From assembly GCA_013115145.1 (NCBI GenBank), contig JAAPAO010000024.1:62001-126000 (forward strand): 64,000 nucleotides of DNA, read 5' to 3'. Under the pieces are notes generated by a model that worked only from the letters and a program-made list of their open reading frames with translations, did not search any database and was not told where the DNA came from. Position 1 is the first letter of the stretch; every line of letters starts with the position of its first letter. Both the position numbers and the translations under genes were made by a program. This document shows, piece after piece, positions 1 to 44,465 of the stretch. Origin of the DNA: Perkinsus chesapeaki ATCC PRA-425. Lineage: Eukaryota > Protista > Perkinsozoa.

Positions 1-3000
1 AATAAGCCGGGACGGTTCAGTGAGAAAATTCGGCGCTTAGTGGTGCAGCGACTGTTGTCCATGCCGCCGCACCCGAACACTAATTTTTCACTATTCGGGT
101 GACCCAAATAGAAGTAGAAAGAAGTAGTGTTGAGGTTTACGATAGATGATCCAAGGAGATATGCCAATAAGTGTTATCCCACCGCTTTGATAGTATGATC
201 CTTCTCCAGATGCTCTTGTGGTATATGAAGGTCTGAAGGTAAGGGTACATCATCATCAATAATGACAGCAAATCTAACAAGAAGAATAAGACAGTCTCAA
301 GTTGAATACCGTCGTCATCATCCTCTTCCTACCTGAAGTCCTTTATTCTAGAGTAACGTGATAAGAAGGGTATCCAATATTTATTACACCAATAAAAGGC
401 GAAGGTCTTGTTACCCTCGGGGATATATAAGTAATTGATATCGGGGTGAACCTAAGACAGCAGAGGCATTCAAAGTCAATAGAAGGCATACTCAAAGTCA
501 ATAGAAGGCATACTCAAAGTCAATAGAAGGCATACTCAAAGTCAATAGAAGGCATACTCAAAGTCAATAGAAGGCATACTCAAAGTCAATAGAAGGCATA
601 CTCAAAGTCAATAGAAGGNNNNNNNNNNNNNNNNNNNNNNNNNNNNNNNNNNNNNNNNNNNNNNNNNNNNNNNNNNNNNNNNNNNNNNNNNNNNNNNNNN
701 NNNNNNNNNNNNNNACGGCATACTCAAAGTCAATAGAGGGCATACTCAAAGTCAATAGAAGGCATACTCAAAGTCAATAGAGGGCATATTCCAAGTCGAT
801 ATTAAAGCACCTCACCTGTTGCACTGCCCATTGAGTATGGTCCTGTGGACTTAGAGTTGGACCATTGTCGCATACAAAGATGTGGCCCGGTGGGAATACC
901 ATCATAGCAGAACGAAGAGTGTTAGTGAAGGACTCAAAGCGTTCAATGGTCATAGTGGACATGTGGCAGGCTATCATAAGACAACAGTCACGAGTCATCG
1001 ACTGGTTCATAACCTAACAGGGAGAAGAAGCCCCGTTATATAAACCACAGAACTGAATGTACATAGGATATTCAATATCAAAGATAAGAAATATTATTAT
1101 TCGATAAGTCAGGAGCGAATTCTAAAACTTACAAAATCGGCGGTAACTGTGTCTTCACTGCTGTCACGACTAATGTTGAGATCGACCGTGATATCATCCC
1201 GAGGGCCATCCAGGCGGTCAGGTTCATCACAAATATCATCATGCTCATAAGGACGACGGCCCTCTTCCATCGCAGTGTTGGTGGCCACCTCATCAACAGC
1301 TATCTTCATAGCCACCTATTAACAAAATGATGATCTATAACAGTGGTAGTGGTGGTGGGCTACCTGAAGGTGCCGACTGAAGACAGGTGCTCGAGGCCAT
1401 TTAACAACACAGCATGCTATAAGGAAAAGGAATGTGTCCAAGAGGACATCAACAAAGATGAGGAGGTCGAGCCAAGATGACATACGCCAGATAGATATGT
1501 TACCGAAAAGGGCATCCAATGCCTAACAAAAGAAGACACCTGCGCTGACGCACTAGTAGGAATGCTCACCGTTCGCTTTGTTTTCACTTGCTGTGGTGAG
1601 AAATATATTATTAGGTAAAGAGTGACGATAATGAGTAATATAAAGAATATATTCAATAGAACTGTCCGGAACCTTTGCTTGGTGAGGAAGGTCGTCAACT
1701 TTTGTTCTCTCAATTCCTTCCACTGTCTTAGCCTCCTCCTCCAAGCGTTGCTCTCATATCTCTTACGAGGGTCTCGGGACCGCAACTGTGACCGCCTGAA
1801 CACAAAACTCCGTCCCCATCCCCGGCGGTGGTGGTATAACTTACACTTTACTGTCACTTAACATACCAGCGCTTCCTCCCATGCTATCATAGGGTCCAGA
1901 TCCCCTCGGTGATGGTGTATGATGACCAGATGTATTAGGTACTGGTGATAGGCCAGCAAAGCTTCGCGGTGTGGCACGTGGAGTGGCACCAGTTTGGCCC
2001 ATCTGATGGCTGTAAAGGGAGCTCAGGTCATATCTGTTCCGCCAAAGTAGCCATATGACATCTCTCGTAACTTACGCCGTTCCTGGTATTGAGGAGGTAT
2101 CACTATCAGCCTTAAACGCCAACTGAGCCTCCTCATCCCACCTTAGCTCTATCTGAGCTCTAAGATATCTGACAATGAAGATAAGACAGTCATCGACAGT
2201 AATCGGCTTATTTACGCTTTCTTTTCAGGAAGTTCTATAGCCATCTTAGCCATACCTACAGCCTTCTCTCGGCGAAGGTTAATATCAACATGACGAAGGA
2301 TTAGCTCAGCCACGAACCAGAATAAGGTAATGAATACAACACCGGCGATGAGGCCTCTCATAGCTACTATGTTAGAAGGGGATATACTGTAGTCGTTGTT
2401 GCCTATTGGACAGCAAGCAATAGGAGGGGACTCTCTTATTAGTAGCTTACAATAGGAACCATCAAGGACATCGGCACAGTTCATGGTAACAATAACTGGG
2501 GACATATCGGGTCTACGGCCAACTAGTATATCACACTCGAGAGGGACGGCACCATAAGCTTCATCGTCATCAAGGCTAGCGGGATCAGGACATCTAAGGT
2601 ACGTTAAGGTACTATACTGCATTATCTTACCTTTGGGAAGTGCCTGCTATACGGCAGGTATTTTCACAGTAGTCCAGGGAGTAACATACTATATCATCTT
2701 CATGGTGGACTTTTGACGGTATTACGCATTTGCCGCGCCTAAGGAGATCACTGTGCTGCCATATAGAAGGGAGGTTAGCTACCGCTCGTCAAGATTGGAA
2801 TTTTCGGACACTGCAAAACCGTTCTCGGCGATAATGGATACAGCCGCCGTTTTATGCGGAAAAGATACCTATAAGAGTCTGGCACTCAATCCGACCTTGA
2901 AAATATCTTTACCTGGCATCGAGGACCATCTGGTATATCAAGGCTCGAAGCGAAAGTATGGGCTATTTGAGGGCATTGATATATTGGATATATACCGATA

Positions 3001-3214
3001 CTTTCTTCAATAATCCAAGAGTATCTAATAAGACCTCATCCACTCTGTAAGCATTTCCTCCTTACCCCCAGGACCACCAAGTGCATGCCGTACCTAGGCT
3101 AACACTAAGGGCTATAAATAGCACAATAACACGTGTAAATATGGGGCATAGAGATGGCTTGCTAATTACTGGTACCACCATGGCTTTATTGGGAGTTCTT
3201 TCATCTGATGCCAT
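1..3214 (-). CDS. Multi-exon membrane-bound GT2-family glycosyltransferase, 3' end beyond window start
   Basis: Spliced minus-strand exons give MASDERTPNK...IVLFIALSVSLG (ATG 3214), further TM segments, then IACHMS...VFPPGHIFVCDNG, VHPDINYLYIPEGNKTFAFYW and FAVIIDDDVPLP (DxD motif). Linking all exons into one gene is inferred. Confidence 0.7.
470..800. repeat. 22-bp tandem minisatellite (CAAAGTCAATAGAAGGCATACT) in a GT2 intron, spanning a 96-N gap (619-714)
   Basis: Units start at 471, 493, 515, 537 and resume after the gap. The array lies inside minus-strand intron 815-452 (CAG|gtgag...cttag|GTT). Confidence 0.95.
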
Positions 3215-3725
3215 ATAACGTCTTAAAGATACTTATAACTACAACCATGCAGCTTCCCTACCCCATGCCTCTTCCCCCCACGGTGCCCCCAAGGTAATGA
3301 ACATGCGCTGAGGGCTGCGTCGCTCCGCCCCGAGCGCAAGACTTTGAGCGCGCGCCATAAAATGATCGGAGCTGTCAAAGAGGTGTTGGGCGGCAAAGCT
3401 GGGATTAGGACCTCAAATAGGGCATATGAACTTCAAGCTGTACTTGACTTGGTTATACGGATAGATAATAAACAATAATAACATTCAAGGAGAAATTATT
3501 ACACTATAATTGAACGATGTTGCACTCAACTTAAACGCGATGTTGGAATCTATTGGGGATATAAGAACTAATATGTTGGACAAAGGGATCTGGAGAAGTA
3601 TCTTCGAGGTTACCCTAAGATCCGCGATAGGTTAATTGGACAACCACTGCAAAACACGGCACTCCTCTCAGCTATTACTCAACTTTATCATATTATCAAA
3701 TTCGTCACTTCCTATAACCCTTGTT

Positions 3726-6700
3726 ATGCTGCCATTGGTAGCTTCGTTATTAACACTGCAATTAGTATTATCTGATATACCAGTACACTGTACGGTAGAG
3801 GATACGACTGGTAGGCAAACTGCTCAATAGGACTGTAAAATAATGTCAACTCAGGCCTGTGGCAACTGTACCTGCTAGATGGTCCTGTCCCTAATTGGAA
3901 CGGAGGGACTACTAGTGCCTTTTGCGGGTATAGCCCTATGAATGATAACCAATTCAATATAGCATTGGGAGATAAGGTTCATACCATACTTCCGTTACCT
4001 CGTGCATCTATGGGCCTCAGGTGGAGCAGTTAATAGAAGCTACGTCCCACTCAGGAAGTCTGTCGTCAAATGTCGTCCAGAACAGCCTAGGTAAGCTCTC
4101 AAATACAAAAGTAACATCAACCACAACTCAGCTATGTCACTCGCCTCTGGGCCTATTGTTCTTAATCTCTCATTGGACCAAGAAATCTTTACCGATGATA
4201 ACGGCCTTCGCAACAGCCACCACTTGAAGGTAAAGTCTATGAGAGTGTATACAGGCGTGTGAGGGTGATGGGATAGGTTACCGACTCTGAGGGAAGATAT
4301 AGAGGCAGTTGGTCTACAGGATATGATGAAGGTCTGGTCCTACAGCATTTAAATTTGAGTGAGATGCTATAGCCTTTTGAATGGTATTGGTGGGAATGCC
4401 AGGCGGAGATAATGGACCATTGCGGAATATGGTAGCATACTTCCGTTACCGCTGCCTTGAGGATAACGACCACTGCGGAGATTATTCGGACTTTGAGGAT
4501 CAGTAAGATATTCTTATCTGTAGATCCAACAATGCTTCCTATATCTCAACAAGAACGCCATTTAACAGATGTTTGGGTTACCATTGCTAATTGTCATTCC
4601 GCTCTGAAAAATGTGAATTTAACACCTGACAATAATACCAGCTTTTCGTATCCGTCCTCATATCGTCTCTACACTAGTTTGATCCTTTCCGAATAAATCT
4701 GACTGGGGCACCGATTGGGTGAACTACAGTGTAGTCTGCGATGAGGCAAACTCTCGTGTGCAGTACAGAATCCACTGGATGGAGTTAGGGTATTCGAGAT
4801 GTGTACGAATCACCAGGTTCGGGCGTACTAAGGGTTACGAGTCCCTATGTGGACAGACGCTGGTGGGATGGTGGAATAATCTCGACGGAGCGAAGCAGGG
4901 ATGTTTTTGGATGCGGAAAAAGGCTGATAAAGATGCCAATAAGGTTGGATATCAAATCTATAATACAGCATAGTGGGTTTTTTGTAAGGTACATGCTGCG
5001 ATGGTGACGAGTGGAGACTCTCGGCGAGCGACGGTAGTGGGGCCTTCAGCGTTCATTGATAGACAGGCAAAGGCTGAAAGGTGAGGATGTTAAGTATATT
5101 ACGGTCGTTATATATGGTTTGAGTAGGCTCCGTGGGAGAGTTAATGATAGGGTGATGAAGCAAAGGGTAGGTTAATATAGGGTAATAGATTATGGTCGTG
5201 TCAGGTGATGATGGCTGGTGAGGAGGATTCAAATGGATATAGGAGAAGGAAAGGCCGGTAAGGGAATGGCGATATAGTGGGGGTAACCGTTAGTTGAATA
5301 TAACTATGGCTTTAATTATAATAATTATTATGATTATATAAACTAAATAACAATTTGGTTATATTAGGAACGGGGATATGAGAATGAATGATATAATGCT
5401 TAATACTAATGTCGTCGGCATCGCCGGCGAACCCGAAATCCCCAATTGACGAACTTGACATGAGGCGGAATACGGATAAAATTGCAATGAACGGACTGAT
5501 GGGGGGACGTGACATCATTTATGGATGGAGCGCGCGCCAGCGACAACTAATTACACACAGAACTGATGGATAATTGACATTGTCAGATATCACATATTGA
5601 CTCGTGGCTCCTATTTCACGGAGGGTTACTTGGATAGGGTGAGTTGTGCTATGGAAGTCTAAACACCATGTATCGATACTCTAAACCTTTGAGGTGCCAA
5701 TCTCCTACCCACCTCAACCAAAAGATGATGTTTGTTTGGCCACCAATGCCATTGAAGATGGCCCTTTGATGAGCTCCCTCCCAACGTCATACGATTATCG
5801 TAAAGTTGTTAAAGACTTCGGAGGTGGGTCCCTTGGAAAATTCCTCCTCGTACTGTACCCTTTTTTAAGACCTAGAAGCCCAGCAGAAGCTCTGTGGTAG
5901 CTGCTACGCCATAGGAGGAGTCTCAGCTCTACAGACGGGTATAGCTCAACAGTTCCAGCGCTTAGGCATGAAATTGCCGTCAAACTGGGGCCTTTCAGTG
6001 CAGGCGGTAAGGGAAGCTTCTGGGGATGCTGTGGACGTATCTTTCAGGCGTTATCGTGCAGCTATTCCTCGCAGGGATGCAATGGTGGCTATCCAGGTAG
6101 ATGAAGTGTTGAGGGTATGGTATATCAGCATTATTAATAAGGTATAATGGCATTTGATATTACAGTGCAAGGAGTACCACAGACTTCCTGTATGCCGTAA
6201 GTTGGCGAAGGGGGCAGCTTTGTCGAGTATGGCTTTGTGAACAGTATAGGCTTTGCCCTTACATCACCGCTCCACATAATCGATCTCTCGCATATCTGCA
6301 CTGTGTGTGAGAGTCGAGGTAAACTCTCTTTGAAAGAGGATTGAACCAACACTAAGTCTAATATGACCCCGAAGTTTCATCATTAAAGCCCTAAAGCTGC
6401 CTGGTTATTGTGAACTGAAAAACTCGCACGAAAAATTCCTCCACAAATTCTTAGCATACACAGCATTAATTTGACTTGAACGGTACCTAACTATGATGGA
6501 GAATTCCTCAACGTACAATAAAAGGCATCTCAGCAATCGAGAATGTCGCGTGTGTCGGTACGCAGGGGACACCTCAACTCTCACACCACAGCATAGATTC
6601 GCGATAAGAATCGGTCATGCGAAAACTATGCGCTAGAGATTAGGCTCCATTTCGTATGCAAGGTAAGCCGTTGTAAGCGATCTCCTTATATGCTGTTACT

Positions 6701-9700
6701 TGACCTTTGTATAGATAGCTGTGATATGGTTAGTAGTGTTGTAAATAGTAGAGGGCATTCTCATAGTAGCTAATATACCGCCGCCGGCTTCTGGGCTAGC
6801 AACAGCAAGAACAACACACATCAACCTTCCTGAGGGGTATACCGTAGGAGGCTCTTGGATGCTTCTTCCAATTATTAGAGTTAAGGAGTTCACACGTGGG
6901 AAGGGTGTGGTATTTGTAAGGTATCAAGGGACTCCAGCTACCTGTGATAGATCATGCTATAATGATCCAAAGAAGTTATGGTATGCTAAGGACTTCAGTT
7001 ACGTTGGTAAGATGGAGCACGTTCGGCATTGTTGCTTGGATCTTTCGCCTGGATAGGTGGCTTCTATGGACGATGCAGTGAGGCACAGATGATGCGACAT
7101 ATAATAGAGCAAGTGTTATCCCTACACCATTGCATAGCAGCTCAGCTGTCTTAGGCACGGTCCGGTGTCCGTGGCGGTGAACGCTCAAACAGACCTACTC
7201 CCTCTGGCACCGCATAACATTACGGGCTTTGAAGGAGAAGTCCCCTATGGGACTGAACACAGTAGCATCAATGGAAGAGCTGTGAGGGGATCAGTGGGTT
7301 GATGCTCGACCAGCACACTTATCAGGTTCGAGTGAAGGCCAGAGCAATGTCTGATATTGGTAAATCATTCATTATGAAGCAAGGGAGCATGAGCCTCAAT
7401 GAGATGCAATTGGCTACTAACTCATCGCTCATAAAAGGGATGAAGGTTACAGGTAGAGTGTGCTGGCTGCGAGGTAGGCAAGTGAAGTGTGTATGCAGCG
7501 TCCCCTTCAAAGCGAGAGATAGCACTATCGATTACTCTGGGGGAAGATGCAACATCATGGCCGGCTGTGGTGAAAGATGTGTCAAAGATCCTAGCTAGTG
7601 TGGATCCTGTTGGATATGAGATCGGGGATCCACAGTATTTAGGTGAGACATGTCCTTCTGCACGTGTTGTTAAAGGGATTAATGGAGCTGTTATTCGCAA
7701 TCCTAAGTGGTTGGCTTGCCAATGCTTGACGTGTCATCACCTCCTCTCAAACTCTTATTACTAAGATGTCACGCACTTACATTCTCATGAACTTGAGAAG
7801 AGTGTTGTTGTCGACGTGAACAGCGACGAGAGAAACCTCCAGGATTGACGAACACCACAACGGGATTATACCCGATTGTAAAGAAAGCTTTGCGCAAGAG
7901 TGGCTAGCATACAACAATCGATTGACTAATCTGAAATCGCACTGAAGAGCGCACCGAGCCTTCTCGGCTCTGGGCATGGCTCAAGGTGCCTCTCTAACAG
8001 GCGCTATTATGTGTTGAAATAATAGTTTAAAAAGTACAATGCCTAGGAGAATGATGAGCCTTGGTAGCTCGCTCGAATGACACTCGAAGTGTCTAGCTGG
8101 GCAGGGTGTACTAATAACAATGAAATGCCTTTCAATATTCATATAGGGGCGTTAGAGACGCCTTTGATAACCATTTTAATAGCCTCCAACACATTTACTC
8201 TTCCGAACTGCATGGTCAGACCCTCATCGCTCGTGACTCCTAAATCACTGCTCTGCTGGAGAATGTACTTGACCTTCTCAGCAGTCAATGTTCCCACTGA
8301 TGAGGTTTTCATTAAAGCGACTATACCAGCCACCAAAGCGGCCGAGTATGGCGTACCTTTGGCAACCCCGTATCCATTTGACACCGTCGTTGTAAAAACC
8401 TCCATGGGAGCTGCGATATCAACATAGGGAGCATAGTTGCTATCGTCGGAAAGGAGCATTATGTCCCTGTATGTTCCGGTTACACAGATCACACCGTCAA
8501 TGTCGTCGGTATACTTACAAGGGTAGACTTGTTCACCAGCTGCAGAGATATCCTTACCATCATCCCCAGCAGGACAAACGATAGAGATGTTAGCGTTGGA
8601 TGCTCTTTTTAGGGCAGCGACGACGTCTGAGCTGAAGGGTCCATACCTAGCTGAAGGATAGAGTATAACACCAAAATTCTTATCAACAGCATAGTTAATA
8701 GCAGCAGCAACGTGAGGATCGTTTAGGTAAGAATCAATGCAGATGGGCATGAGGTCGATAGCTTCTGTGACACCTGCTATGCCTATCTCGTTATCAATCG
8801 TCGCTCCAATGATACCAGCCAAGGGAGTTCCATTACCATCTCTGTCTTCCTCGCACCCGCCCTTGGTCACAACGTCATATCCATCTGAGGCGGTTTCGTC
8901 CAAGTCAGGGTGTATATAGTTTATACCAAAACCAATAATGGCTACACTTGACCGAACTCTGTAGCCCCTCTCAATTATAGTACGCCAAGCATCGGCCAGC
9001 TCTATCGCATCGAGGTAGGACTTCTGCTTGGACTTGTAGTATTCGTCATCCGGATCGACCAAGGTAGATGCAGTCATCCTGATGCTGATAGCCAGTAGAA
9101 GAGATAAGAGAGTGTAGAACATCGGGGGTTGTAACTAATAATAACACCGGTGACCTTCCCTCACTGAATCTACCTTACCTATGGAGCGGCACCTTGGCCT
9201 CCACTAGATCATGTGTACGCGTGATCACTAGGCGTTTCTCGCCCTCTCCAGCTTTGGTGTGTATTCTATAACGAATAGTGACCCTGTATTTGGGTCACTG
9301 ATCCAAATACGTCCTGCGTAATGCCCATGTACCTTCATTTACGGAAGCGAACTGATAGCCCCGTAGAGCGGATCCAGTGGCTCGGACGGAGCCGCTCCGG
9401 GAGATTGGCAGATGGTGCTAAATATCCCATCCTTTTCCTCGCAATTACTACCTCGACCTTCGGAGGCGACATGAATGCTGTCGACTGTCTTGTTTTGGGA
9501 ATAATATGGACCCGTTTCAAGGTGTTGCCTCTAACGACCCGCCGCCGCCGGCCCGCATCTCTCCGCTGTAGGCCCACGTTACGCGTTGTTTTCCCGGACT
9601 GAAAATCACTCTTGCACACCCTCTAAAGACTCGCATGTTCACCTTGAGTCCTGTTTTCATGCAGGCTCTAGGGGCCGGACTCTTTCATCCTCTTGAGCCG

Positions 9701-10142
9701 GACTTGCGAGCATAAAAGGATTCCGCTCTCTGCCAGGCATTGATAAATGGGAGTATACGAATCATGCACTTCTTGTAATGGGATGGGGCTCGGAAATAGA
9801 CGAGAGAGAAGGGAAAAAGGTGAAGTACTGGATAGCTAGAAATTCGTGGGGCGATCGATGGGGTAATGACTCTCTGTGCTGCAAATTGGTCAAAGGGAAG
9901 CTTGTTAGGTCCAAACGGTGATGGGTATGTGAAGATACTGAGAGGAGTTAATTATGGAGGGATTGAGTCACAGGCTGTATCGATACTACCTGACCCCTGT
10001 AGAGGCGCATTCAAAGGTAGACTTGAAAATAGCATTATTGCTAATGCTTTATTCAGAACATCTTGATCGTCATTTGAGGGATACCGGCATGCCATGGTCT
10101 GATTTACCCAAGTCAATGAGAACATGCTATCAAACTTCATGA
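3726..10142 (+). CDS. Cathepsin C / dipeptidyl aminopeptidase-like papain-family protease, paralog 1 (multi-exon)
   Basis: Signal peptide then SDIPVHC; exclusion-domain-like CGQTLVGWW; LPTSYDYR; QKLCGSCYA (Cys 5902-5904); WYAKDFSYVGGFYG; HGPVSVA; WEYTNHAL (His 9763-9765); KYWIARNSWG; ends RTCYQTS*. Confidence 0.85.
8139..9122 (-). CDS. Secreted subtilisin (S8)-fold protein with substituted catalytic residues, intronless, nested in a cathepsin C intron
   Basis: 327-aa ORF with signal peptide and S8 motifs VAIIGFG..HPDL, DGNGTPLAGIIGA, GIAGV, CPAGDDG, VDIAAP, GTPYSAALVAGIVALM, FGRVNV. Confidence 0.85.
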   Translation of the reverse strand: MFYTLLSLLLAISIRMTASTLVDPDDEYYKSKQKSYLDAIELADAWRTIIERGYRVRSSVAIIGFGINYIHPDLDETASDGYDVVTKGGCEEDRDGNGTPLAGIIGATIDNEIGIAGVTEAIDLMPICIDSYLNDPHVAAAINYAVDKNFGVILYPSARYGPFSSDVVAALKRASNANISIVCPAGDDGKDISAAGEQVYPCKYTDDIDGVICVTGTYRDIMLLSDDSNYAPYVDIAAPMEVFTTTVSNGYGVAKGTPYSAALVAGIVALMKTSSVGTLTAEKVKYILQQSSDLGVTSDEGLTMQFGRVNVLEAIKMVIKGVSNAPI

Positions 10143-10251
10143 TTACCACTTGACTGCTTTGTAGTCGTCATTGAGTTATTCTACGGGAGTGGCGGGGGCC
10201 AAAGATGGACCGAAACACGACACTCATATTGCCGAACGCTAGTTGAACCCT

Positions 10252-13200
10252 ATGCGGAACGGAGTTCTGTATGCTACACTCGTCGGCTCCCTCACTCACT
10301 GGGTTGTTGGAGATTTACCAAGCCACTGCACTCGAGAGGACTCCGCTGGTAAAAACCTGTATGGCTTAGCACCTTGCATCAATGGCTGCTTAGGCAAATG
10401 GAGACTATATTTTCTCAAGGGGCCTGTCCCGGACTGGCGGACCAATACTGGCGGGAACTTCTGTGGGTACACGGCGATAAATAGCAATAGAGAGAACCTA
10501 GAACGAGGACAGAGGGTACGGGGAGTAACTCATTCGGTGAGCATGCAAAATGCGTGTCTAGATTGAGCAGTTGATGCATCGAAGCGATCCGAGCAGCGAG
10601 GACTTTAAAGAGCTCCTGGGTAAAGCTGCTCCTCGTGATGTTAGAGAAGCAATATGACATCAGGTATGTCAGCTGATGGGGATGTTGTTGAAGTTGAGCT
10701 GTCATTAACACAAGCAATAGAGGATGTCTATGGTGAGGCGAATGCCCATCATTTGATGGTAGGGACTCATCAGTATACTGTCATTACATAGTCGGCTCGC
10801 AATTTAGATCTTGGACCCTTCGGACCAATCAAAGAGACTTGGGTACTGGACAATGGGCTTCGACGAGTTCGTCGTGCTCAACGATTTTCACCTAACTCCG
10901 AGTGCAGGTTGGTCGGGGAGGGTGTTGTCGCACTGCGAAGGGCCCTCCTTGTAGTTGCTCGTAAAGTAGACTTGTTTGTGCGGTATCGGTGTACAGGAGA
11001 GACGGAATGTGGGAAGGACGATGATGCCGAGTCACCGTAAGTGCGAGGTTTTTTAATAGAATGAGTATTGACGCGAGCCTCAGGGATGGCACGACCAACG
11101 GGTATGTATCATACTGCGGTCAGACTTTGGTTGGGTTGTGGTCAGCTGTAGATGGCTCGAAGCAAGGCTGCGTGTGGGCCAGGAAGTCAGACATGAACGA
11201 AGCCAACAAGGTCGGCGGCGGTTAGAGTTGCTTGGCCTTCATCAAATCATCGCGTTAATTCAGATTCATAGTCTTGCTGTGCCGCACAATGAACAACACG
11301 CTGGCGGACGACCAATAAAGATACTGTCTCCCGAGTTCACTAATCTTGAAACCTCAAGGCGAGTTGGTGAAGTATTTTCGCATACCTCCGGTGTAATGGA
11401 AGTAACATTCATGGAACGAAATTAGTAAATCTAGGATCATGTGTTCAGGCTGGGAGCCAGTGGCCATTCCTTACGTCTAGCGGACGGACAAATCGGTACA
11501 GAAAAACCTACTGTTATTACCCAATGGCAAATGTCAGATACAAGGTCTATGAAACAGGACAGTTTTCAGACGAAGTTAGCTACCCTATTACTGCTGGAAC
11601 AATAGACAGGGTGAAGGGATACCAGTCTGAGGTTGTAGGCTGTAGCTATTTAGCACTTTTGATCGATGCGTTATCAGCATTCACGTCCTTTGGACCTCTG
11701 TCATACTGAGGCAGACTTTGAAGCTGATAGCATCCTTAGTACGCTGCCAGAAGGTGTCCGGGAATCCTACGATTTCAGAGACCGTTACGGATCTTACGGA
11801 AGTGAGTGATCTGTTCATAGAGGGTGCCTCCCTGGAGAAGATATCAAATTTTAGGTAGAGTGAAGAATCAAGGCCCATGTGGTGGATGCTACGCTATGGG
11901 CATTGCGGATGCAGTCCAGGGCGCCATATACAAGGACTTTACTGATATAGGAATACCAATACCAGAGGACTTCGAGCTATCTCCGCAAGGGGTAAGTGGT
12001 GTTATTCTGATGCTCAGAATCATTGCTCAACAGATACTTTCATGCAGCTATACCGCTCAGGCTTGCAATGGCGGCTTCCCAGGTAGGATCTAGGTATGCT
12101 AGGAGAGTGTAGATTGCTTTGGTATTGGCAGGGTCTGTTGGCTTTGACTTACTCGTCACCGGTATAACAACGGAACAGTGCATGCCGTAAGCCTTATGGG
12201 TCACTGTGTGTCTGTGTAGTGTGAATGCTAGCTATACGTTTGATAATGGTAAATGCAAGGCTGAGTGCTTTAGTGATGAGAGAGAAGTGTGGTATGTGAA
12301 GGAAGGCACTTATAAAGGTGAGGTTAATCCTTCTATGAGAGATGATATAGATGTCCTCAGGTGGCTTCTATGGTCGATGCAGCATGGCAAGGATAATGCA
12401 ACATATTTACAGGTAAAGAGGCTATCACCTGGAACGCACCAGGAACCGAGTGTTTCAGGCACGGTCCGATGCAAATAGCAATAGAGGCGCCAAACGGGCT
12501 CAACCCAACACGCTTTGAGACCATAGTGTCCGAGGATGTCCATCACATTGAACCTGAGCACAGCACAGCTGACCTGGTGAGATGTTATGCGTAGAGCTGC
12601 CAGTGATTCTGCACTCGACAGATTGAGATATCGATTCGCAATGCCCCGAAGAAGTTCCTGGATATTCTCAACCATGTCCACTTGAATGATGACCAGAGTG
12701 TATCACTTAGTGAAGAAAATGCTCATTTGCTACGTATGGTAGCTCACAGTACAAGTAGCAGTAGATTTGTTATTATCAGGGCATTTGTTTGTTGCACCGG
12801 GTAAGCAGCCAGAGAGGGACGGCGATGTCCATTTGAGGGTGCACGCTTCCGTCGAACCCAATAAGGACGCTTTGGAAAGGTCGCTCTCATCACTTCTATC
12901 ACAGTTCGGCTCGCATTTTAAAGTGGACCATATTGAAGCTATTGGTGGGCTCTGAATAGTCCTATTTAACCTGTTTACTTTGGCTTCAGGTTCTGAGAGC
13001 TGGGGCTATACTAATCACGCACTACTCCTTGTTGGATGGGGTGCAGAAGTTGACCCAAAGACAGGCAAAGAAGTTAAATATTGGATTGCTAAGAATTCCT
13101 GGGGCCCTAATTGGGGTAAGGGTTGCAGTACTGTGGCGATATTACGGCTTTGATTCCTTTATTAGGCCCATTTGGTGACGGTCACCTTAAACTACAGCGT

Positions 13201-13397
13201 GGCATCAATCTAGGCGGAGTAGAGGCCCAGGCTATGTCATTTCTACCTGATCCATGCAGAGGAGCTTATAGATGTAGGCTACCAGCAAACCACAATCACA
13301 TATATTGCCAGATAATGTTGATAAACATGTAGGAGGTGACCCAGAGAGGATCGCCAGGTTGCCGAGCCACGTGCGTGCGTGCTACGAGCTGGCATGA
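10252..13397 (+). CDS. Cathepsin C / DPAP-like protease, paralog 2 (multi-exon)
   Basis: MRNGVLY...GDLPSHC; [12 protein letters not shown] (Cys 11887-11889); [18 protein letters not shown]; HGPMQIA; [14 protein letters not shown]; [10 protein letters not shown]; ends ACYELA*. Confidence 0.88.
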
Positions 13398-13909
13398 TAG
13401 TAGTTCATGTCGTCCTTGTTATACTTGAGCCGTTGCTATCCAGAATGCTGAATGTTTAGTTGTTATTAATATCGGCCATCCTTCTAACACTTGGCATAAG
13501 GTACGTACCTTAAGCCGCTAACACTTTAGCCGCTCGCGGGTTTGCACGCATGCACAATTTACATACTCACAATCTAGGCTGGTGCCGCCAGGCTGATGGA
13601 CCATGTTGTAATTTAATCGACAATTACCTCCGCTAAGTGGAAGGGGGTGCCGTGGGAGTGTGCCTACCAAGCACACTCCGCACTGAAAAGCCACACAACT
13701 GAAAAATGCACAACGCGCATTACTTCTTAGCGGGGCGAAGCAGATATCAGTTTCTTAACTTTGCGCTGTTGCCTACTTTTTGATTTAATATTATATTATT
13801 ATTATGTTTATCCGACAATCAGGGTTCCGGTATGTACAGAGGCAGGTAAGAATGTATAGATGGAACAGGTTAACATCTAATATGTTGCTTACTGGTTCTC
13901 GCTCAGAGG

Positions 13910-15215
13910 CAGGCTCATCTATGGCCTTGGTAATGCTGCCATCCTTGCTGCCCTTACTCTGTTATTAGGTTATCTGTGGCGCTGGTATCGGTGGATTCTC
14001 CCTTGCGTCTCACGCGGTTACATCTCCTCATGACCATGGTAGCTCTTGTGGGTGGTTTGGGAGTAAAAGCAATAAGATGGATGAAGTGGCCGATGAAAGG
14101 GACGTCTTGAGCGATATTGATTCTCACAAGGTATTTATACCACATTTCTCTCAAATCTACGTTCAGACCGCTGCGTTCAGGCCTATACAACAGGAAGCGG
14201 CGGTGGGTGTAACATCGTGGCCAAGATGGGGGACGGCGGTAGCTCCGCTACTGAAGCCGATTCAACTCCGTCGACTAAGTCGGGAGAAGATGAGGCTATG
14301 TGGGGAGAGCTAATGGATGGAGTAGAGGCCCCTGCTGATGGAAGGATCAGGCCAACTGAGCTACACTTGGCTGCATTTAGAGGAGATATAATAGAGGCTA
14401 AGACTATCATAGATAATAAGGTAAAGAGGCTTAAGGCCCCCTTTGTAAGAGGCATGCTATTTGTTTAGGGGCATGAAGCTAATCAGGCAGATAGTGAGGG
14501 TATGACACCGTTGATGGTAGCAGTTAAGCAAGGCCATATGGATGTGGCGGAGCTGCTGTTGGGTGTTAGTGATGTTAAGGCTACAGATAAGGAGGAATGG
14601 ACAGTACTTCATTGGTAGTAGAATGCGGGGGGGATATGGATAGAGGATGGCATTATAGGGCATGTGAAGTGGGAAGATTACCGTTGGTTAAGAGGCTCTG
14701 TGAGGAGCATTCGGAGCTTATGACTATGAAGGACAAAAGGGGTCTTACGCCTTTACATGTGGGGAGGGTCATGGCTAGAGGTGTCAGAATAATCCCCCAT
14801 TAGATTGCTTGTTGGCAAGGGAATGTGGAGCTAGCTAAGATATTATTAGATCATAAGGCAGATATGAATGCATTGACCAAATGGGGCGAGACGCCATTGG
14901 TAAGCTTCGATTGTTGTTGTTGTTTTTCGTATTATCGTTATTCTCATCATCATCAGCATCACGCAGCCTTCTTTGGTCATGTTGAAGTATGTCGATTGTT
15001 ATTGGAGCGAGGTGCCGATCCTCTAGTAAAGGACAGACTACGTCGCTCGCCTAAGTCATTGGCCAGCGGCAAAGGTGTTGGTGCAGAGCTGCGGTGAGCA
15101 CATGTGTGTAGGGGAGGAATGGTAATTGGGTTTTTAGTGATTTGTTCCGAGAAGCCATGACTGTTGGTAAGTGTTAGTGGCCTCACCAATGGAGTGAGTG
15201 CCGTATGTATGACAT
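13910..15215 (+). CDS. Ankyrin-repeat protein (multi-exon; both ends uncertain)
   Basis: TELHLAAFRG, GMTPLMVAVKQGH, GLTPLH(I)ACWQGN, GETPLHHAAFFGHVEVCRLLLERGAD across short introns. Confidence 0.8.
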
Positions 15216-39042: not shown

Positions 39043-42000
39043 ATGAAATACTTTTCACAGCATACGCACTCTCATAGGTCGGTTGTGTCTTAATTCATAT
39101 CAATTGGAGCGGGTGAAAGAATTAGCCTTGGAGTCTGGTGAAAATCAAGGATCCCTCGATTCGGTCGAACCCATCGGGCAGCCCATCGTGTCGACACCAC
39201 CGGAATCATTCATCCGTTGCCTGGTTACAGTAGCCTTTGCGTTGGGATCTTCTCTGGGATTAGCTGCTGCGATCGTACAGTACAGCGTGAGGGCATCTTT
39301 AATGTCAATTCCTCTTCTTGGATCAGCCGGATCGTTTTTGGGAGTGTCTACCCGAAAGCCACGGAACACGGGCACTCCCGGAGACGCTTCTATGCATCCA
39401 GTTGCCGACAAGCCGTTGCCTAGCAGAGTCGCTGAGGTTATAGCAGCACTGCAGAAGATTCTCGATACCATTCAACAAGGTCACATAAGGCAAGAACCCT
39501 TACGCTCCTCAAAGAAAAGCAACCATCCAATAATCGTATTGTATTATGCAGGCAAGAGGAAGTGGACAATATCCTGGCTCTAGTTAGAGAGGTGTTGTCC
39601 GAGTGTAGGGAGGCCGCAAAGGGAAAAGACTTCCGTGAGCACACGTAGAGGTTATTAGCGCACATCTGAGTGAAGAACCTTGAACAGGTTAATAGCTCCA
39701 GCGTATCGTCTATGGCACGTATGCATATCCCTCCTCAAAGCTGTTGATGAGTACGGTTCATGCACCGTCGATGAGGAGCCTACAACGGCCAATCTACGGG
39801 TATCTAGTCTTTTCCGATGTTGCCGAAGATTGTTGGTGGTTTATAAGGAGCTCGATTGCTTTTGCCGAGAGATTGCTGCTTGGACGCTGGAGCAGGGAAT
39901 CAGGGATATACTTAACTCGTACAGTGATGGCGAAGAAGCACGCTCGCAGAGGGACAACATGATAAAGATCTGGTATGACGTCACATAGCATCATTGGTGT
40001 CCTGGAACGGACTCAGGTTGCGGACTGGGCAGAGTTGGCTCTCGTTGGTGCCAGGAAATGCTGAGCAATGGACCGCTGGGACTGCGGCATTAACAAGGGG
40101 AATAACAATATTTAAAAAGGCCGTTACGGAGCTGTCTGAGGAATCGGTTAGTGACATTACTAAGAATGCTGCCTACTCTGGCGCCTTGTGCCTGGCTCAA
40201 GGGCTGTGCCTCACTGGGAACTGGGATGGCGCTGTCCAGGTAAGTCGTTCTATGATGGGATGTCCTTGGCTGTCACTGCCGCATTTTAGACGATAAGCAG
40301 CTGTCGCGGGCTCTTATCTACCTGGGTCGGGTATCGCCGTGTTGAAGCGTCATTAGAGCTGGCGTGCCAGTGCAGGGATATCGCCACCAGAATGATTCGC
40401 GCAGCAAAATCGCCAAGTGGAAAGGAATGGGCTATCGGTGGGGCTTTACTAATTAGCCAGCTCCCGTAGGGTGGCTTCGAATTCATACATAGGACTCCCT
40501 GGATGGTCTTCCTCGTCCACGCCAGTCCTGCCCGGAGAGTTGGGGAAGGTGGCGAACCTGCTGAAGTGTGCACTCGAAGTTGTCTCGGATGATTCTTCGC
40601 CTGCAACAGACAACGAGGCTAGCTGTAAGCCGATGGGTTATGTCGTGAATTTCAAAGTCCGTAACACCACAGCCTGTTCCGTGGATGGAAGCGTTAGTCT
40701 CGATTGCGCATGTCCGTAGTGGTTGTCCAACTAAGCAAGACCCGCAGCGAGGTGTACCGTGTGCTGGCTGAGGTCCTGTCAATGCAGGGGCAGGGTGAGA
40801 AAGCTCTTGAGAGTATACAGAATGCTATACGGGAAGACATCCAGCACAAGCAATATGAGTACGGCCCACTGAAGGACATACACTTGACGAGCTTGTTTCC
40901 AGGGGTTATTATGAAAGCATCCGTGTTGCTGCATGGGTCATCCTCAACACCAATCCAGAGACTCTGAAATCGGGGACGACAGAAAAGCTAATCAAAACTG
41001 GAGAGGTGAGTACACCAGTCTTGAACATATATTACGGTGACGCACCTTAGCTGAAGAGATTGGTGGAAGAGTACTGCGCAGCATCCACAGAAGTCCCGTC
41101 GGAGTTGCAACCAGGACCATCGAGCAGGCTGTTGAACTTGGTCGAGCCTTTAGTACACGCTGTTGTCGCACTATGTAAACCACACAATCGTCCAGAGTTT
41201 TGTTCGGCCAGGTTAGAGGAGATGGTTGAGGTACGCTTCACGATAGTGCGACCGGTTCTGCATAATTCAGGACGTATTATTGTCAGGCACTCAGCCTGGT
41301 AATGCGATCTCTCGAACGAGAATGTGCAGGCTCGTCGTTGGCGTTGATGGCTGCGAGGATAGCGGACGCGATAGGGACTTTATCTCGATCCATTTCTCGG
41401 GGCTCGGAGAAGGGAGCTGGTGGGTTCCTTCGCTGGATCCTGGTTTCGCTGAATCGCGCGAGCGAAAATAAATGAGAGAATAATGCACCGTCCGGGAATT
41501 GAACCCGGACCATCTGCTTGGAAGGCAGATATCCTAACCATTAGACCAACGGTGCTGCTTAAAAGTTGAACGTGGTAAATTGCTCCACCACCCCATGCCG
41601 CTTGTACCGCTATATTGTGCATATTATACCGACTGATTATTCGATCAAGCATCTGCAGATACCCGATTGGGCGGTACTGCGTCTAACGGACTTAGTAGCC
41701 TATTGCGCGACATCGTTCTTGTCATATCGGCTAAGAGTCCCTGGGTGGACGAGGTTGTGAAATCACAATGCTCGGGCATAGTCTGGAACATGGCTGCCGG
41801 TGTAATACCCCTACGGAACCGTTCACTGCGACGGACGTGAATTAACGGCCGGTTCTCAGTTGTACACGTGTGGAGATTATGTTGCTGCGTCAACGTGGTT
41901 TGAACTATGCCAGCAAGTCGTGGATGAAGAGTCCGAATATCGGTGCTGGCAGGCTAGAGCGCTTTGCTCGTACAGAGCTTGTCAATACGAGGAAGGTTAT

Positions 42001-44465
42001 CGGAATTCCGACATCCGTTGCGGGTATGAACTCAGCCTTGGTCGATATTTAGGTGTCCGTCTGGCAAGAGCGGCACTGCGCTTATGTTCGGATGCAACTG
42101 CAAGATCGCAACCACTGCTCGCGATGGTCAATTGTGCGATTGACGGACAGGTGTCGGGAGCTGGTAAGAAATGTTTTCCATGTGGCTGCAGTGCGAAACT
42201 GCTAGAGGTCATGCTTGAATATACCAGCCCAAGAGCATGTTGCCGCATTGTATTGTTCACTCCTCGTGGCCGATCCTTAGTTACTGAAATCATTGGCGAG
42301 TTAGAAAAGATAGCAGCTAGTTCTGCCGAGGGAGTATCACCACAGCTACTCGTGGCAGTGCTGAACAAATTTGAAGGGTTAGAAGGTATGGAGGAGTATG
42401 TCTCTAGATGTCTCAAGGTAAGGTGTTCTCGGTACAGATAACCTAGAGTTAATTTCATTGTGCCAGCTGATTGGCCAGTACCTCTGTCGGGGGAGCGATG
42501 GCCCTCAAATAAACCTATTGGACCGTTTGACGATATTTCGTTGTATAGCAAAGAACGCTGTCGACGGGGACGACAGTGAAGCAGCTCTTCATTATGTCGA
42601 AGCAGTATGTGACAGTTTGAGCGGCGTAAGACAAACAAAGAGTGGGTTTATTCTTATTCTTTGAACTCTGAGTACACACTCAAAGCAACGGCTTGCGATG
42701 CAGAGTCACGAATCCAGCCCCTCGTCCACGGGCGATACAACAAGGGGTTGGTCAGAGTCGCTATCGTCTAGCGGTTAGGACGTCACGTTGTGGCCGTGAC
42801 AACCCCGGTTCAAATCCGGGTAGCGACTTTTGCTTGACATCATCATGGCGTCCAGGTTCAGCTAGAAGATTGCCAGTCTGACCAAGAACAAGTGGTAGAT
42901 CAAATTGCGGCCTTATTTAAAATCGGCTGGAACCTAGGCGTTCGGCTGGTAAACTGCGACGACCAGGAAGAGTCTAGTCCTTGGGATGCTGTGAGTAGCG
43001 TACACTCGGGGCTTATGTCTGCCGTAAGCTCTTGGCTTCTCAGTCCTTACGAACGGAAACGGTACTTGGGAATGTTAATCCAAGCTTTCAGGCCTTTCGC
43101 GCCTTTCGCAGTGCCCGCACCCTGATAGATCAATTCCTTCTACCCCATGAGAAGGCCAAGGCGGAACGAGACGAAAAGGAATCATTGAAGGTGAGCCAGC
43201 ACATTTGTCAGACAACCTCTGCACCCTATTGAATATCGTGGCAGCGATAGACGTTTTTCAGCTAACAGAGGATTCCCGTATGTGCCTTATTTTTATGCTC
43301 ACGGCCCTGACCAGATTGGCTTTGAGCTTGGAAAACTCGCCACAAGAGTCATCTGACAATTCACACGAGTAGAATAGTCACTGAAGGCCGACTAGCAATG
43401 GCAGAACTATTTCAGAGCTGAACAGGAGGAGCCACCATCCACGAACTCAAGCCAAGCTAGGGGTCTGGCCGGCCTGACAGCCAAGGAACTTTATAAAGTA
43501 TTCGATACTGCTGCTGTGGCCGCTAATTTCCCTCTGAATCTTCACAAACATGCTATTCTGTTTTTCGGCAGGTGGGATTAGGTTTGTTAAAAGTAAACCA
43601 GGAAATGGACAACGGGGCAGCCCGAAGTCTACCGCTGATGCTACTGTTTGAGTTCAAGTGCACCGTTGGGGCACTCTCGGGTGCGAATGACGGCGAGACG
43701 AGATTAGCTGAAGTCAAGCGCATTCTTGAGGACGCTCAATCTAAACGAGTCGCCTCCAAGGACTGGCTTGAGGTACATTCAACGGTCTTGTGTTCAGGTT
43801 TTGTCTGTCGTTGGCATGTAGATACTCACCTCCTGGTGCCTAAACCGGCGTCCGCCTGCATTCGGCGAGGCAGGTATGGTTCTTGCAGTATTGACCAGTT
43901 CCCCGAGAGATGCTGGGCGGATGCTTCCCGTCTATTATCGCGAGTGGCTCCGAGCACAAGAAGGAGCTGATGATTCGACACTTCAGGTGAGCTCCCCGCA
44001 AGTTAGGTTTTTGTGGTCTTAGAATGCTTCCGAACTGTCAGATTCTTGGCACCTTGCTGACCCTCCTAGACGAGGCTGTGCAGTCCAATGGAGCATCCTC
44101 TTTGGCCGAGGTAGGCCCTTTCCTATTATAGCATCTACAGATGTACTTTTGTTAGATTGGATACAATGAAAAGGAGATAAAATGGGTGCTATGTTACTCC
44201 TGGGATAGAGCTGTTCGGCTCTACAGGTCCTTCCCAACTTGTAGCACTTCCAAAAGCTGTGATAGTTCCATTTTTCAGGCGATGTAGTTATGTTTTAGCA
44301 GAGCGTATGATGAGCAAAAGCATGTCCTTCCTAAGGTTTGCGCTACCCGAGACGAAGGAGTCTCTCGAAGGTGGCTGGCCACTTTTTCGATATCATACCG
44401 TTGTTAAGCGGTCAGGTCTCATGGCACAAGCATATGACCAGTGCTTGCAGAGAGTTCCAGCCTGA
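39043..44465 (+). CDS. Large helical/TPR protein, ZIP4/SPO22/TEX11-like (multi-exon; start uncertain)
   Basis: RLWHVCISL; VWNMAA..LYTCGDYVAASTWFELC...RCWQARALC; LFKIGWNLG; AERMMSKSMSFL. Order and spacing recall ZIP4/TEX11. Confidence 0.5.
41484..41555 (-). tRNA. trnG: tRNA-Gly (TCC)
   Basis: Minus strand GCACCGT TG GTCTAATGGTTAGGA T ATCTG CCTTCCA... with anticodon stem TCTGC/GCAGA around TCC, T-arm CCGGGTTCAATTCCCGG and acceptor GCACCGT/ACGGTGC. Confidence 0.95.
42757..42828 (+). tRNA. trnH: tRNA-His (GTG)
   Basis: Acceptor GTCGCTA/TAGCGAC, anticodon arm TCACG-TTGTGGC-CGTGA, T-arm CCCGGTTCAAATCCGGG, followed by TTTT. Confidence 0.95.

What the first reader, a model, noticed from the sequence alone, without database searches (positions are those of the whole stretch)
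7643..9736. Subtilisin-like gene nested antisense in a giant cathepsin C intron
Seen: paralog 1 exon ends QYL-G|gtgag (7642) and resumes ccag|G-IDKWEYTNH (9737), a phase-1 intron of 2094 nt. Paralog 2 has the same phase-1 intron (EAI-G|gtggg...cag|[10 protein letters not shown], 12945-12989) of only 45 nt. The extra sequence holds an intact single-exon S8-family ORF on the opposite strand. Inference: a (retro)gene inserted into a pre-existing intron in a genome of otherwise tiny introns, placing one protease-family gene inside another.
Basis: partly seen in the sequence, partly recalled or inferred. Interest (0 to 1): 0.75.

Follow-up and report, generated by a model that had tools for sequence, protein, structure and literature searches.

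The report
Dead subtilisin gene nested in intron
In the clam and oyster parasite Perkinsus chesapeaki, a complete gene for a catalytically dead, probably secreted subtilisin-like protein sits backwards inside a 2.1-kb intron of a cathepsin C gene whose sister copy has a 45-base intron at the same spot; this is a real but ordinary case of one gene nested in another.

Summary
The window is Perkinsus chesapeaki DNA. It carries two tandem cathepsin C (dipeptidyl peptidase I) genes, 3726-10142 and 10252-13397. From the catalytic-Cys exon to the stop codon, both have ten introns at the same positions and phases. Paralog 2's introns are 33-50 nt. Paralog 1's are 40-50 nt except two, of 724 nt and 2094 nt (7643-9736, phase 1, GTGAG...CAG). 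All paralog 1 exons modelled are open and keep Cys, His and Asn.

The long intron holds an intact 327-codon ORF on the minus strand (8139-9122). It has a subtilase (S8) fold: Pfam E = 8e-22, AlphaFold pLDDT 91, TM 0.82 to Plasmodium SUB1. It belongs to a family of more than 100 intronless subtilisin genes in this genome. It alone has lost all four catalytic residues, and its branch is 4-5 times longer than its paralogs'.

The "retrogene" idea is not supported. I found no poly(A) trace, target-site duplication or spliced-leader relic, and the whole family lacks introns.

Whether the 7642-9737 junction is used could not be tested.

The scan flagged this same stretch in other reads, and its unchecked notes call intron nesting common in this genome. 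Verdict: a genuine nested gene, and a new member of a known kind.

The parts
3726..10142 (+). Cathepsin C (dipeptidyl peptidase I) paralog 1, the host gene. It has ATG, a signal peptide and then Asp-Ile-Pro at the start of the exclusion domain. The C1 domain runs from 5869 and the stop codon ends at 10142.
   Evidence: (PF08773 on 4815-4949, E = 1e-4; PF00112 on exons). The N-terminal part (3726-5868) was mapped only as four conserved blocks and not modelled exon by exon.
7499..7642 (+). Host exon immediately upstream of the long intron. It ends ...DPQYL plus the first base of a Gly codon.
   Evidence: It is an open frame, entered in phase 1 from a 46-nt intron that paralog 2 also has (46 nt, phase 1).
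7643..9736 (+). Enlarged phase-1 intron of 2094 nt, GTGAGA...CTGCCAG.
   Evidence: It is homologous to the 45-nt intron 12945-12989 of paralog 2.
7805..7999 (.). Copy of a dispersed repeat of about 195 bp with TGTTA...TAACA ends (MITE-like), inside the long intron.
   Evidence: Twelve other copies in the genome, 69-90% identical.
8139..9122 (-). Nested single-exon gene for a 327-aa subtilase-fold protein. It has a hydrophobic N-terminal leader, no propeptide, and all four catalytic residues replaced (Gly64, Asn97, Asp187, Pro258).
   Evidence: The exact protein is already in NCBI, UniRef and nr.
9123..9736 (-). 614 nt between the S8 start codon and the host acceptor, presumed to be the upstream or promoter region of the nested gene. 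It is unique in the genome and 52.6% G+C.
   Evidence: No Rfam family or tRNA found. The promoter role is inferred, not shown.
9737..9862 (+). Host exon immediately downstream of the long intron: G-IDKWEYTNHALLVMGWG...RNSWG, carrying the catalytic His and Asn.
   Evidence: (PF00112 E = 3e-7). It is 75% identical to a sister-species ORF, P0023.
9909..10142 (+). Last two host exons (9909-10016 and 10057-10142, including the stop), both open.
   Evidence: Exon 9909-10016 is 85% identical to P0023.
6197..6920 (+). Second enlarged intron of the host gene (724 nt, against 33 nt in paralog 2). It holds a stretch bounded by 16-nt inverted repeats at 6305-6320 and 6571-6586.
10252..13397 (+). Cathepsin C paralog 2, the comparison gene. 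All introns in the modelled part are 33-50 nt.
12945..12989 (+). 45-nt phase-1 intron of paralog 2, homologous to the 2094-nt intron.

Best explanation
This is a true nested-gene arrangement in Perkinsus chesapeaki. Cathepsin C paralog 1 is an intact gene. One ancestral short intron, about 45 nt and phase 1, lies just before the exon that encodes the catalytic His. It was enlarged to 2094 nt by DNA insertion. The inserted material holds a complete, independently transcribed antisense gene from the genome's large family of intronless, propeptide-less, probably secreted subtilisins, plus a short dispersed repeat. The host pre-mRNA is spliced across the nested gene with ordinary GT-AG sites. The nested gene is read from the other strand, with its own upstream region inside the intron. 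Its protein keeps the subtilase fold but has lost Asp, His, oxyanion Asn and Ser, so it cannot be a serine protease. It is kept open by selection for some non-catalytic role, most plausibly binding. What is shown: the gene anatomy, the intron homology, the fold, the loss of catalytic residues and the family membership. What is inferred: that both genes are expressed, that the long intron is spliced, and that the insertion was at the DNA level and is not recent.
For: (1) Exon-by-exon frame check. All paralog 1 exons from the catalytic-Cys exon to the stop are open. All ten introns share position and phase with paralog 2, and only two differ in length. (2) The 2094-nt intron has consensus-like sites, G|GTGAGA and a pyrimidine-rich CTCTCTGCCAG|G. 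(3) The exons after the intron keep the catalytic His (YTNHA) and Asn (RNSWG). They are 75% and 85% identical to an ORF from another species' assembly (P0023, Logan). That ORF matches paralog 1 better than paralog 2 (75% vs 68%), and the intron it reads through shows no similarity. So these exons have been under purifying selection. (4) The S8 ORF matches Pfam PF00082 at E = 8e-22. Its AlphaFold2 model has pLDDT 90.9 and pTM 0.90. Foldseek gives TM 0.82 to the P. vivax SUB1 catalytic domain and finds thermitase and subtilisin BPN'. (5) The genome holds at least 107 S8 matches. In a tree of ten sampled paralogs and seven outside S8 proteins, the nested copy falls inside the clade of this genome's paralogs (support 100/99), on a terminal branch of 1.51 against 0.13-0.43. 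(6) In the alignment, D64, H97, N187 and S258 are nearly invariant, and the ten paralogs sampled all keep them; the window copy has G, N, D and P. (7) In a simulation of neutral substitution (indels not modelled), an ORF that stays open while all four catalytic codons change occurred in at most 0.025% of runs at any divergence tested. This argues for selection on the open frame. (8) The exact 327-aa protein is already in NCBI and UniRef, and six of eight paralog ORFs match annotated P. chesapeaki proteins exactly, so the family is annotated as single-exon genes. (9) There is no second copy of the locus in the assembly and no N in 3000-14000. (10) Long annotated introns exist in the genus: longest 11,034 nt in P. 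marinus (PMC7789003 Table 1).
Against: There is no transcript evidence of any kind: the 7642-9737 junction and antisense transcription over 8139-9122 are untested. If it is recent, intact downstream exons say little. I could not establish how the public annotation models the host gene. A search of 1.84 billion cluster representatives with the downstream exon found no long Perkinsus protein containing it. One donor in the host model (GTTATC at 7115) is non-consensus. The N-terminal third of the host gene was not modelled exon by exon.
Confidence: 0.7

Rival explanations
1. The insertion disabled cathepsin C paralog 1. Transcripts end inside the former intron (the frame runs on from 7642 to a stop at 7762-7764), giving a protein without the catalytic His and Asn. 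Exons 9737-10142 are then relics that have not yet decayed.
For: A 2094-nt intron is about 40 times the genus median of 49 nt. The tandem paralog 2 could cover the function. The search of cluster representatives found no long Perkinsus protein model containing the downstream exon. The age of the insertion is unknown.
Against: All three downstream exons are open, with intact splice sites and catalytic His and Asn. They are 75-85% identical to the sister-species ortholog, while the intron that ortholog reads through is unalignable. The nested gene has no paralog above 47% identity and sits on a branch of 1.51, and the repeat beside it is only 69-90% like its other copies. These point to an old rather than a fresh insertion, and relics would have decayed over that time. 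The same gene also carries a 724-nt intron with every downstream exon intact.
Confidence: 0.15
2. The S8 ORF is a decaying pseudogene that happens to be still open, so the locus is just a long intron holding a dead gene.
For: All four catalytic residues are replaced. Its branch is 4-5 times longer than its paralogs'. No ortholog was found in other species by the word-based search, although that search also missed known 45% paralogs.
Against: The 327-codon frame is intact with a start, a leader and a stop. The fold is predicted with pLDDT 90.9. In the neutral simulation, an open frame together with four changed catalytic codons occurred in at most 0.025% of runs, and the frame stayed open in under 1% of runs at K = 0.2 or more. 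There are no length-changing gaps relative to paralogs beyond a few residues.
Confidence: 0.08
3. The nested gene arrived as a retrocopy: a reverse-transcribed, spliced-leader-capped mRNA integrated into the intron.
For: It is a single exon. Recycling of processed cDNAs is reported for dinoflagellates, and genomic spliced-leader relics are reported in P. marinus (PMC3101222 and the works it cites).
Against: No spliced-leader relic in the window at up to 3 mismatches. No T-run next to the stop and no flanking direct repeats. The gene brings 614 nt of unique upstream sequence. The whole family of more than 100 members is intronless, so lack of introns does not mark this copy. Old hallmarks could have eroded, so the idea is unsupported rather than excluded.
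Confidence: 0.1
4. Assembly artefact: a 2-kb piece from elsewhere was joined into the cathepsin C gene.
For: The genome is a draft of 3544 contigs, and the intron holds a dispersed repeat that could mislead an assembler.
Against: The flanking exons are collinear, on the same strand and in the same phase as in paralog 2, so a chimeric join would have to fall at both ends inside one 45-nt intron. The S8 gene and its flanks occur once in the assembly. There are no Ns. The repeat lies inside the stretch, not at its edges.
Confidence: 0.03

Closest known systems
Nested (intronic) genes of eukaryotes, for example the classic Drosophila case of a cuticle protein gene lying antisense in an intron of Gart (from my own knowledge, not checked here)
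   Same: A complete gene with its own start and stop lies on the opposite strand, wholly inside one intron of a host gene whose exons stay intact.
   Different: The setting is a compact alveolate genome with a genus median intron of 49 nt and 109 nt between neighbouring genes. Host and guest are both from protease families. Expression of either gene is untested.
tRNA genes and one other protein gene nested antisense in enlarged introns of the same genome
   Same: Same genome and same layout: a guest gene antisense in an enlarged intron. One follow-up note calls such nesting commonplace here.
   Different: Most of those guests are tRNA genes of about 75 nt. This guest is a 984-nt protein-coding gene with about 1.1 kb of flanks. 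I did not check those notes.
Perkinsus subtilisin-like serine proteases (perkinsin; P. marinus AAQ54740 and the many related ESTs in PMC2868825)
   Same: Same protein family and genus, with a probable secretion signal. The family here is large, intronless and lacks a propeptide.
   Different: Ten of the closest paralogs, the ones sampled here, keep Asp, His, Asn and Ser. This copy has Gly, Asn, Asp and Pro at those positions and a 4-5 times longer branch.
Apicomplexan SUB1 catalytic domain (P. vivax and P. falciparum structures 8COY, 8POL, 4LVN) and bacterial thermitase or subtilisin
   Same: Same fold: Foldseek TM 0.82 and 0.77, E about 1e-22.
   Different: Sequence identity is 22-26%. There is no prodomain and no catalytic residues.
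Cathepsin C / dipeptidyl peptidase I (Toxoplasma CPC1-3, Plasmodium DPAP1-3, human CTSC)
   Same: The host gene has a signal peptide, an N-terminal Asp, an exclusion domain (PF08773) and a papain-like domain with Cys, His and Asn.
   Different: It carries lineage-specific variable exons between the Cys and His regions. The long intron sits just upstream of the His exon, near the place where the heavy and light chains are cut apart in the human enzyme (my own knowledge).

Membership tests
Nested intronic gene | Host exons on both sides of the guest lie on one strand, with intact splice sites and a continuous reading frame. | tested here: met
   phase-1 GT-AG intron, open exons to the stop, same position and phase as in paralog 2.
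Nested intronic gene | The guest gene is complete (start to stop) and lies wholly inside one intron. | tested here: met
   the ORF 8139-9122 lies within 7643-9736. Its length equals that of annotated single-exon paralogs.
Nested intronic gene | Both genes are expressed: the host is spliced across the guest and the guest is transcribed. | not testable with these tools
Subtilase, peptidase family S8 (PF00082) | Sequence and fold of the subtilisin-like alpha/beta domain. | tested here: met
   (E = 8.1e-22, 78 bits against a cutoff of 21.8). (pLDDT 90.9; TM 0.82 to SUB1; thermitase and BPN' also found).
Subtilase, peptidase family S8 (PF00082) | Catalytic triad Asp-His-Ser plus the oxyanion-hole Asn. 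| tested here: not met
   Gly64, Asn97, Asp187 and Pro258 stand where nearly all aligned relatives, including all ten paralogs sampled, have D, H, N and S. It is a homologue of S8 peptidases, not an active one.
Cathepsin C / dipeptidyl peptidase I (host gene) | An exclusion domain starting with Asp straight after the signal peptide. | tested here: met
   (MLPLVASLLTLQLVLS then DIPVHCT). (PF08773, E = 1e-4 on one exon, below the whole-protein cutoff because only a piece was scanned)..
Cathepsin C / dipeptidyl peptidase I (host gene) | A papain-like C1 domain with catalytic Cys, His and Asn. | tested here: met
   (CGSCYA, YTNHA, RNSWG). (PF00112). In some searches the best named relatives are apicomplexan dipeptidyl peptidase 1 proteins.
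Retrogene (processed copy) | A poly(A) remnant after the 3' end and flanking target-site duplications. | tested here: not met
   no T-run on the plus strand next to 8139 and no flanking direct repeats.
Retrogene (processed copy) | A relic spliced leader upstream of the coding region, as in dinoflagellate and Perkinsus recycled cDNAs. | tested here: not met
   no match to PmaSL1 or PmaSL2 (sequences taken from PMC3101222) in the window at up to 3 or 2 mismatches.
Retrogene (processed copy) | Introns lost relative to an intron-bearing parent gene. | tested here: not met
   the paralogs are themselves single open frames and are annotated as single-exon proteins.

The most novel reading that the evidence does not exclude
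The secreted, catalytically dead subtilisin is kept by selection as a decoy that soaks up the bivalve host's tight-binding subtilisin/perkinsin inhibitors, protecting the parasite's active subtilisins. In addition, its antisense position inside a cathepsin C intron couples the two genes' expression, for example by transcriptional interference, so that one protease programme is switched against the other.
Probability: 0.07. Interest if true: 0.6.

Novelty: new member of a known kind. Interest (0 to 1): 0.3.

Why it matters
The locus shows that the splicing machinery of a parasite with mostly ~50-nt introns probably copes with a 2-kb intron that holds a whole gene. It also shows how introns grow here, by insertion of genes and short repeats into existing short introns. 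In practice it warns annotators: gene finders tuned to tiny introns may truncate or split the host cathepsin C gene. The nested protein is the more interesting part. It is a pseudo-protease in a family tied to Perkinsus virulence, and bivalve hosts make inhibitors against that family (PMC2868825). That aspect is the subject of separate findings of this scan.

Tried and rejected
So synteny and the intron length in other Perkinsus species could not be tested.

(2) The genome search reports no relatives for this genome.

(3) I tried to find the annotated host protein. The downstream exon was searched against 1.84 billion cluster representatives. It found only a 168-aa ORF that reads through an intron, from another species (P0023, Logan), and a 143-aa metagenome or metatranscriptome fragment (P0027). 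No long Perkinsus model turned up.

(4) A first alignment of P0025 with all 11 paralog 1 exons placed the exon fragments too badly to use. A profile of three apicomplexan cathepsin C proteins plus window exons as separate rows was searched. It listed only the best 120 of 1506 hits, all apicomplexan or unnamed and none flagged as the window's own, so it was uninformative.

(5) The word-based search with the S8 protein returned only the protein itself and bacterial or metagenome subtilases at 26-34% identity. I first read this as "no orthologs, perhaps bacterial origin". I rejected that reading after one search showed that annotated P. chesapeaki paralogs at 45% identity are in the collection but were missed. 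The tree then placed the gene firmly inside the clade of this genome's paralogs.

(6) I searched for a spliced-leader relic because "GGCTCAAGGT" in the 195-bp repeat resembles the end of the leader. No match passed the threshold, so I dropped it as chance.

(7) Rfam and tRNA scans of 5000-14000 found nothing.

(8) I did not search a joined (spliced) protein model. Exons were searched one by one by reference and frames were checked exon by exon.

(9) I left the third homologous-protein search unused. Its sensitivity limit of about 50% identity made a useful answer unlikely for its cost.
Full report
Identity of the DNA. The window is contig C1522:62001-126000 of a 41.7-Mb assembly in 3544 contigs. 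Exact look-ups of six subtilisin paralog ORFs from the same assembly returned NCBI proteins named "[Perkinsus chesapeaki]" with locus tags FOL47_.... The organism is therefore P. chesapeaki, as earlier notes of this scan had said. No part of the window looked human.

The observation. Reading 6000-11000 and 11000-13600 and comparing the two regions in protein space (tblastx) shows two collinear tandem genes. Both are cathepsin C (dipeptidyl peptidase I). Each begins with ATG, a signal peptide and then Asp at the start of the exclusion domain: MLPLVASLLTLQLVLS then DIPVHCT from 3726, and ...HWVVG then DLPSHCT from 10252. One exon matches PF08773, the cathepsin C exclusion domain, at E = 1e-4. 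Several exons match PF00112. The best named relatives are apicomplexan dipeptidyl peptidase 1 proteins.

I modelled both genes exon by exon from the catalytic-Cys exon to the stop codon, carrying split codons across each intron.
- Paralog 1 exons: 5869-6006, 6048-6096, 6142-6196, 6921-7006, 7057-7114, 7155-7281, 7326-7452, 7499-7642, 9737-9862, 9909-10016 and 10057-10142.
- All of these exons are open. Cys (CGSCYA), His (YTNHA) and Asn (RNSWG) are present.
- The ten introns have phases 0,1,2,1,2,0,1,1,1,1 in both paralogs.
- Intron lengths are 41,45,724,50,40,44,46,2094,46,40 nt in paralog 1. In paralog 2 they are 42,49,33,43,46,45,46,45,50 and about 38 nt; I placed the last junction by eye, one base off the printed model.

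The donor is G|GTGAGA at 7642|7643, the acceptor is CAG|G at 9736|9737, and the homologous 45-nt intron is at 12945-12989. The N-terminal third of paralog 1 (3726-5868) was mapped only as four conserved open blocks, not exon by exon.

What is inside the intron. The intron divides into five parts.
- 7643-7804: 162 nt of unique sequence.
- 7805-7999: one copy of a dispersed repeat of about 195 bp with TGTTA...TAACA ends. It has twelve other copies in the genome at 69-90% identity.
- 8000-8138: 139 nt downstream of the nested gene's stop.
- 8139-9122, minus strand: the 327-codon ORF.
- 9123-9736: 614 nt of unique, slightly G+C-richer sequence upstream of the ORF.
No Rfam family or tRNA lies in 5000-14000. 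The 724-nt intron likewise holds a stretch bounded by 16-nt inverted repeats, with partial copies elsewhere. Both long introns of this gene therefore look like short introns enlarged by inserted DNA.

The nested gene.
- The ORF matches Peptidase_S8 (PF00082, E = 8.1e-22).
- An AlphaFold2 model built on an alignment of paralogs and bacterial relatives is confident (pLDDT 90.9, pTM 0.90).
- Foldseek places the model with the Plasmodium SUB1 catalytic domain (TM 0.82), thermitase and subtilisin BPN'.
- The genome holds at least 107 matches to this protein. Most are single open frames of 330-370 aa, and many lie in tandem arrays.
- Six of the eight paralog ORFs I looked up are identical to annotated P. 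chesapeaki proteins.
- The nested protein itself is already in NCBI, UniRef and nr.
- Like its paralogs it has a hydrophobic N-terminal leader and no propeptide.
- In the alignment, Asp64, His97, Asn187 and Ser258 are nearly invariant (at least 90% of rows), and the ten paralogs sampled all keep them. The nested copy has Gly, Asn, Asp and Pro there. It cannot be an active serine protease.
- In a maximum-likelihood tree of ten sampled paralogs and seven outside S8 proteins it sits inside the clade of this genome's paralogs (support 100/99). Its terminal branch is 1.51 substitutions per site, against 0.13-0.43 for the paralogs. Its best paralog is only 45-47% identical.

Is the nested ORF a dead relic? 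I simulated neutral substitution on it, without indels. The frame stays open in 23% of runs at K = 0.05, in 0.65% at K = 0.2 and in none of 4000 at K = 0.5. All four catalytic codons change in 0%, 1.4% and 17% of runs at those values. Both together occurred in at most 0.025% of runs at any K. Indels would lower this further. The open frame, the confident fold and the long branch fit a pseudo-enzyme kept for a non-catalytic role better than a decaying pseudogene. This is inference, not demonstration.

Is the host gene still whole? Three points argue that the long intron is spliced.
- The three exons after it are open, keep the catalytic residues and have normal splice sites.
- A search of 1.84 billion cluster representatives with the exon 9739-9867 gave as best hit a 168-aa ORF from a Logan assembly of another organism (P0023). 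It matches paralog 1 better than paralog 2 (75% vs 68% in that exon), so it is the ortholog, and the gene duplication predates the species split. It is 75% and 85% identical to the two exons, while the intron it reads through has no counterpart. These exons have therefore been under purifying selection.
- The guest looks old. It has no close paralog, it sits on a long branch, and the repeat beside it is diverged. Relic exons would have decayed over that time.

The weak point is that the date of the insertion is not known. A recent relocation of an old gene would leave the same picture. I could not find out how the public annotation models the host gene. Exons were searched singly by reference.

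Origin of the guest. The retrogene suggestion finds no support.
- There is no T-run beside the stop and there are no flanking direct repeats.
- There is no relic of the Perkinsus spliced leader (sequences from PMC3101222; searches).
- The flanks share no DNA similarity with the flanks of paralogs.
- The whole family is intronless.
The guest brings 614 nt of unique upstream sequence, which fits a DNA-level insertion or duplication better. Old hallmarks could have eroded, so the mechanism stays open.

How unusual is it? In the P. marinus annotation the median intron is 49 nt, the mean 124 nt and the longest 11,034 nt (PMC7789003 Table 1). A 2094-nt intron is far out in the tail but not unheard of. 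Here only 109 nt separate the two cathepsin C genes. Earlier notes of this scan describe tRNA genes, and one other protein gene, nested antisense in enlarged introns of this same genome. One follow-up note calls such nesting commonplace. I did not verify those notes. The same stretch was also flagged in other reads of this scan. Gene nesting in introns is a well-known arrangement in eukaryotes. That both genes belong to protease families is most simply a coincidence, given more than 100 subtilisin genes in 42 Mb.

Verdict. It also overlooks that the guest is a pseudo-protease and that the host has a second enlarged intron. I put about 0.7 on a working nested arrangement, 0.15 on a truncated host gene, 0.08 on a dead guest and 0.03 on misassembly. 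This is a new member of a known kind. Interest is modest (0.3) and lies mainly in the pseudo-subtilisin, which other findings of this scan address.

Noticed in passing
window 7805-7999: A dispersed repeat of about 195 bp with TGTTA...TAACA ends has twelve other copies in the genome at 69-90% identity. One copy lies about 860 bp from another subtilisin paralog on contig C3182. It looks MITE-like, is unclassified and has no Rfam match.
   Followed up: partly
window 6197-6920: Cathepsin C paralog 1 has a second enlarged intron (724 nt against 33 nt in paralog 2). It holds a 282-bp stretch bounded by 16-nt inverted repeats (6305-6320 and 6571-6586, 94% complementary), with partial copies on other contigs.
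   Followed up: partly
window 10142-10252: Only 109 nt separate the stop codon of cathepsin C paralog 1 from the start codon of paralog 2. This fits very tight gene packing, or processing of a shared transcript by spliced-leader trans-splicing.
   Followed up: no
G000 contigs C80, C234, C552, C3142, C2920, C1: The intronless subtilisin family lies largely in tandem arrays of 3-7 copies per contig. Some copies carry an in-frame stop inside the match, so they may be pseudogenes.
   Followed up: no
window 7115: One intron of the host gene (7115-7154, 40 nt) seems to use a non-consensus donor, GTTATC. This is the only choice that keeps the frame and the conserved ...IIEQV-HGPVSV join.
   Followed up: no
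window 41484-41555 (-) and 42756-42829 (+): tRNA-Gly(TCC) and tRNA-His(GTG) genes lie 1.2 kb apart. I did not examine whether they sit in introns, as other notes report for this genome.
   Followed up: no
P0027 (JGI contig of 1590 nt): A 143-aa fragment from a metagenome or metatranscriptome carries the Perkinsus-type ...ITPDPCRGAF motif. The exons homologous to 7499-7642, 9737-9862 and 9909-10016 are already joined in it, so it is a spliced cathepsin C transcript of a related perkinsid.
   Followed up: partly
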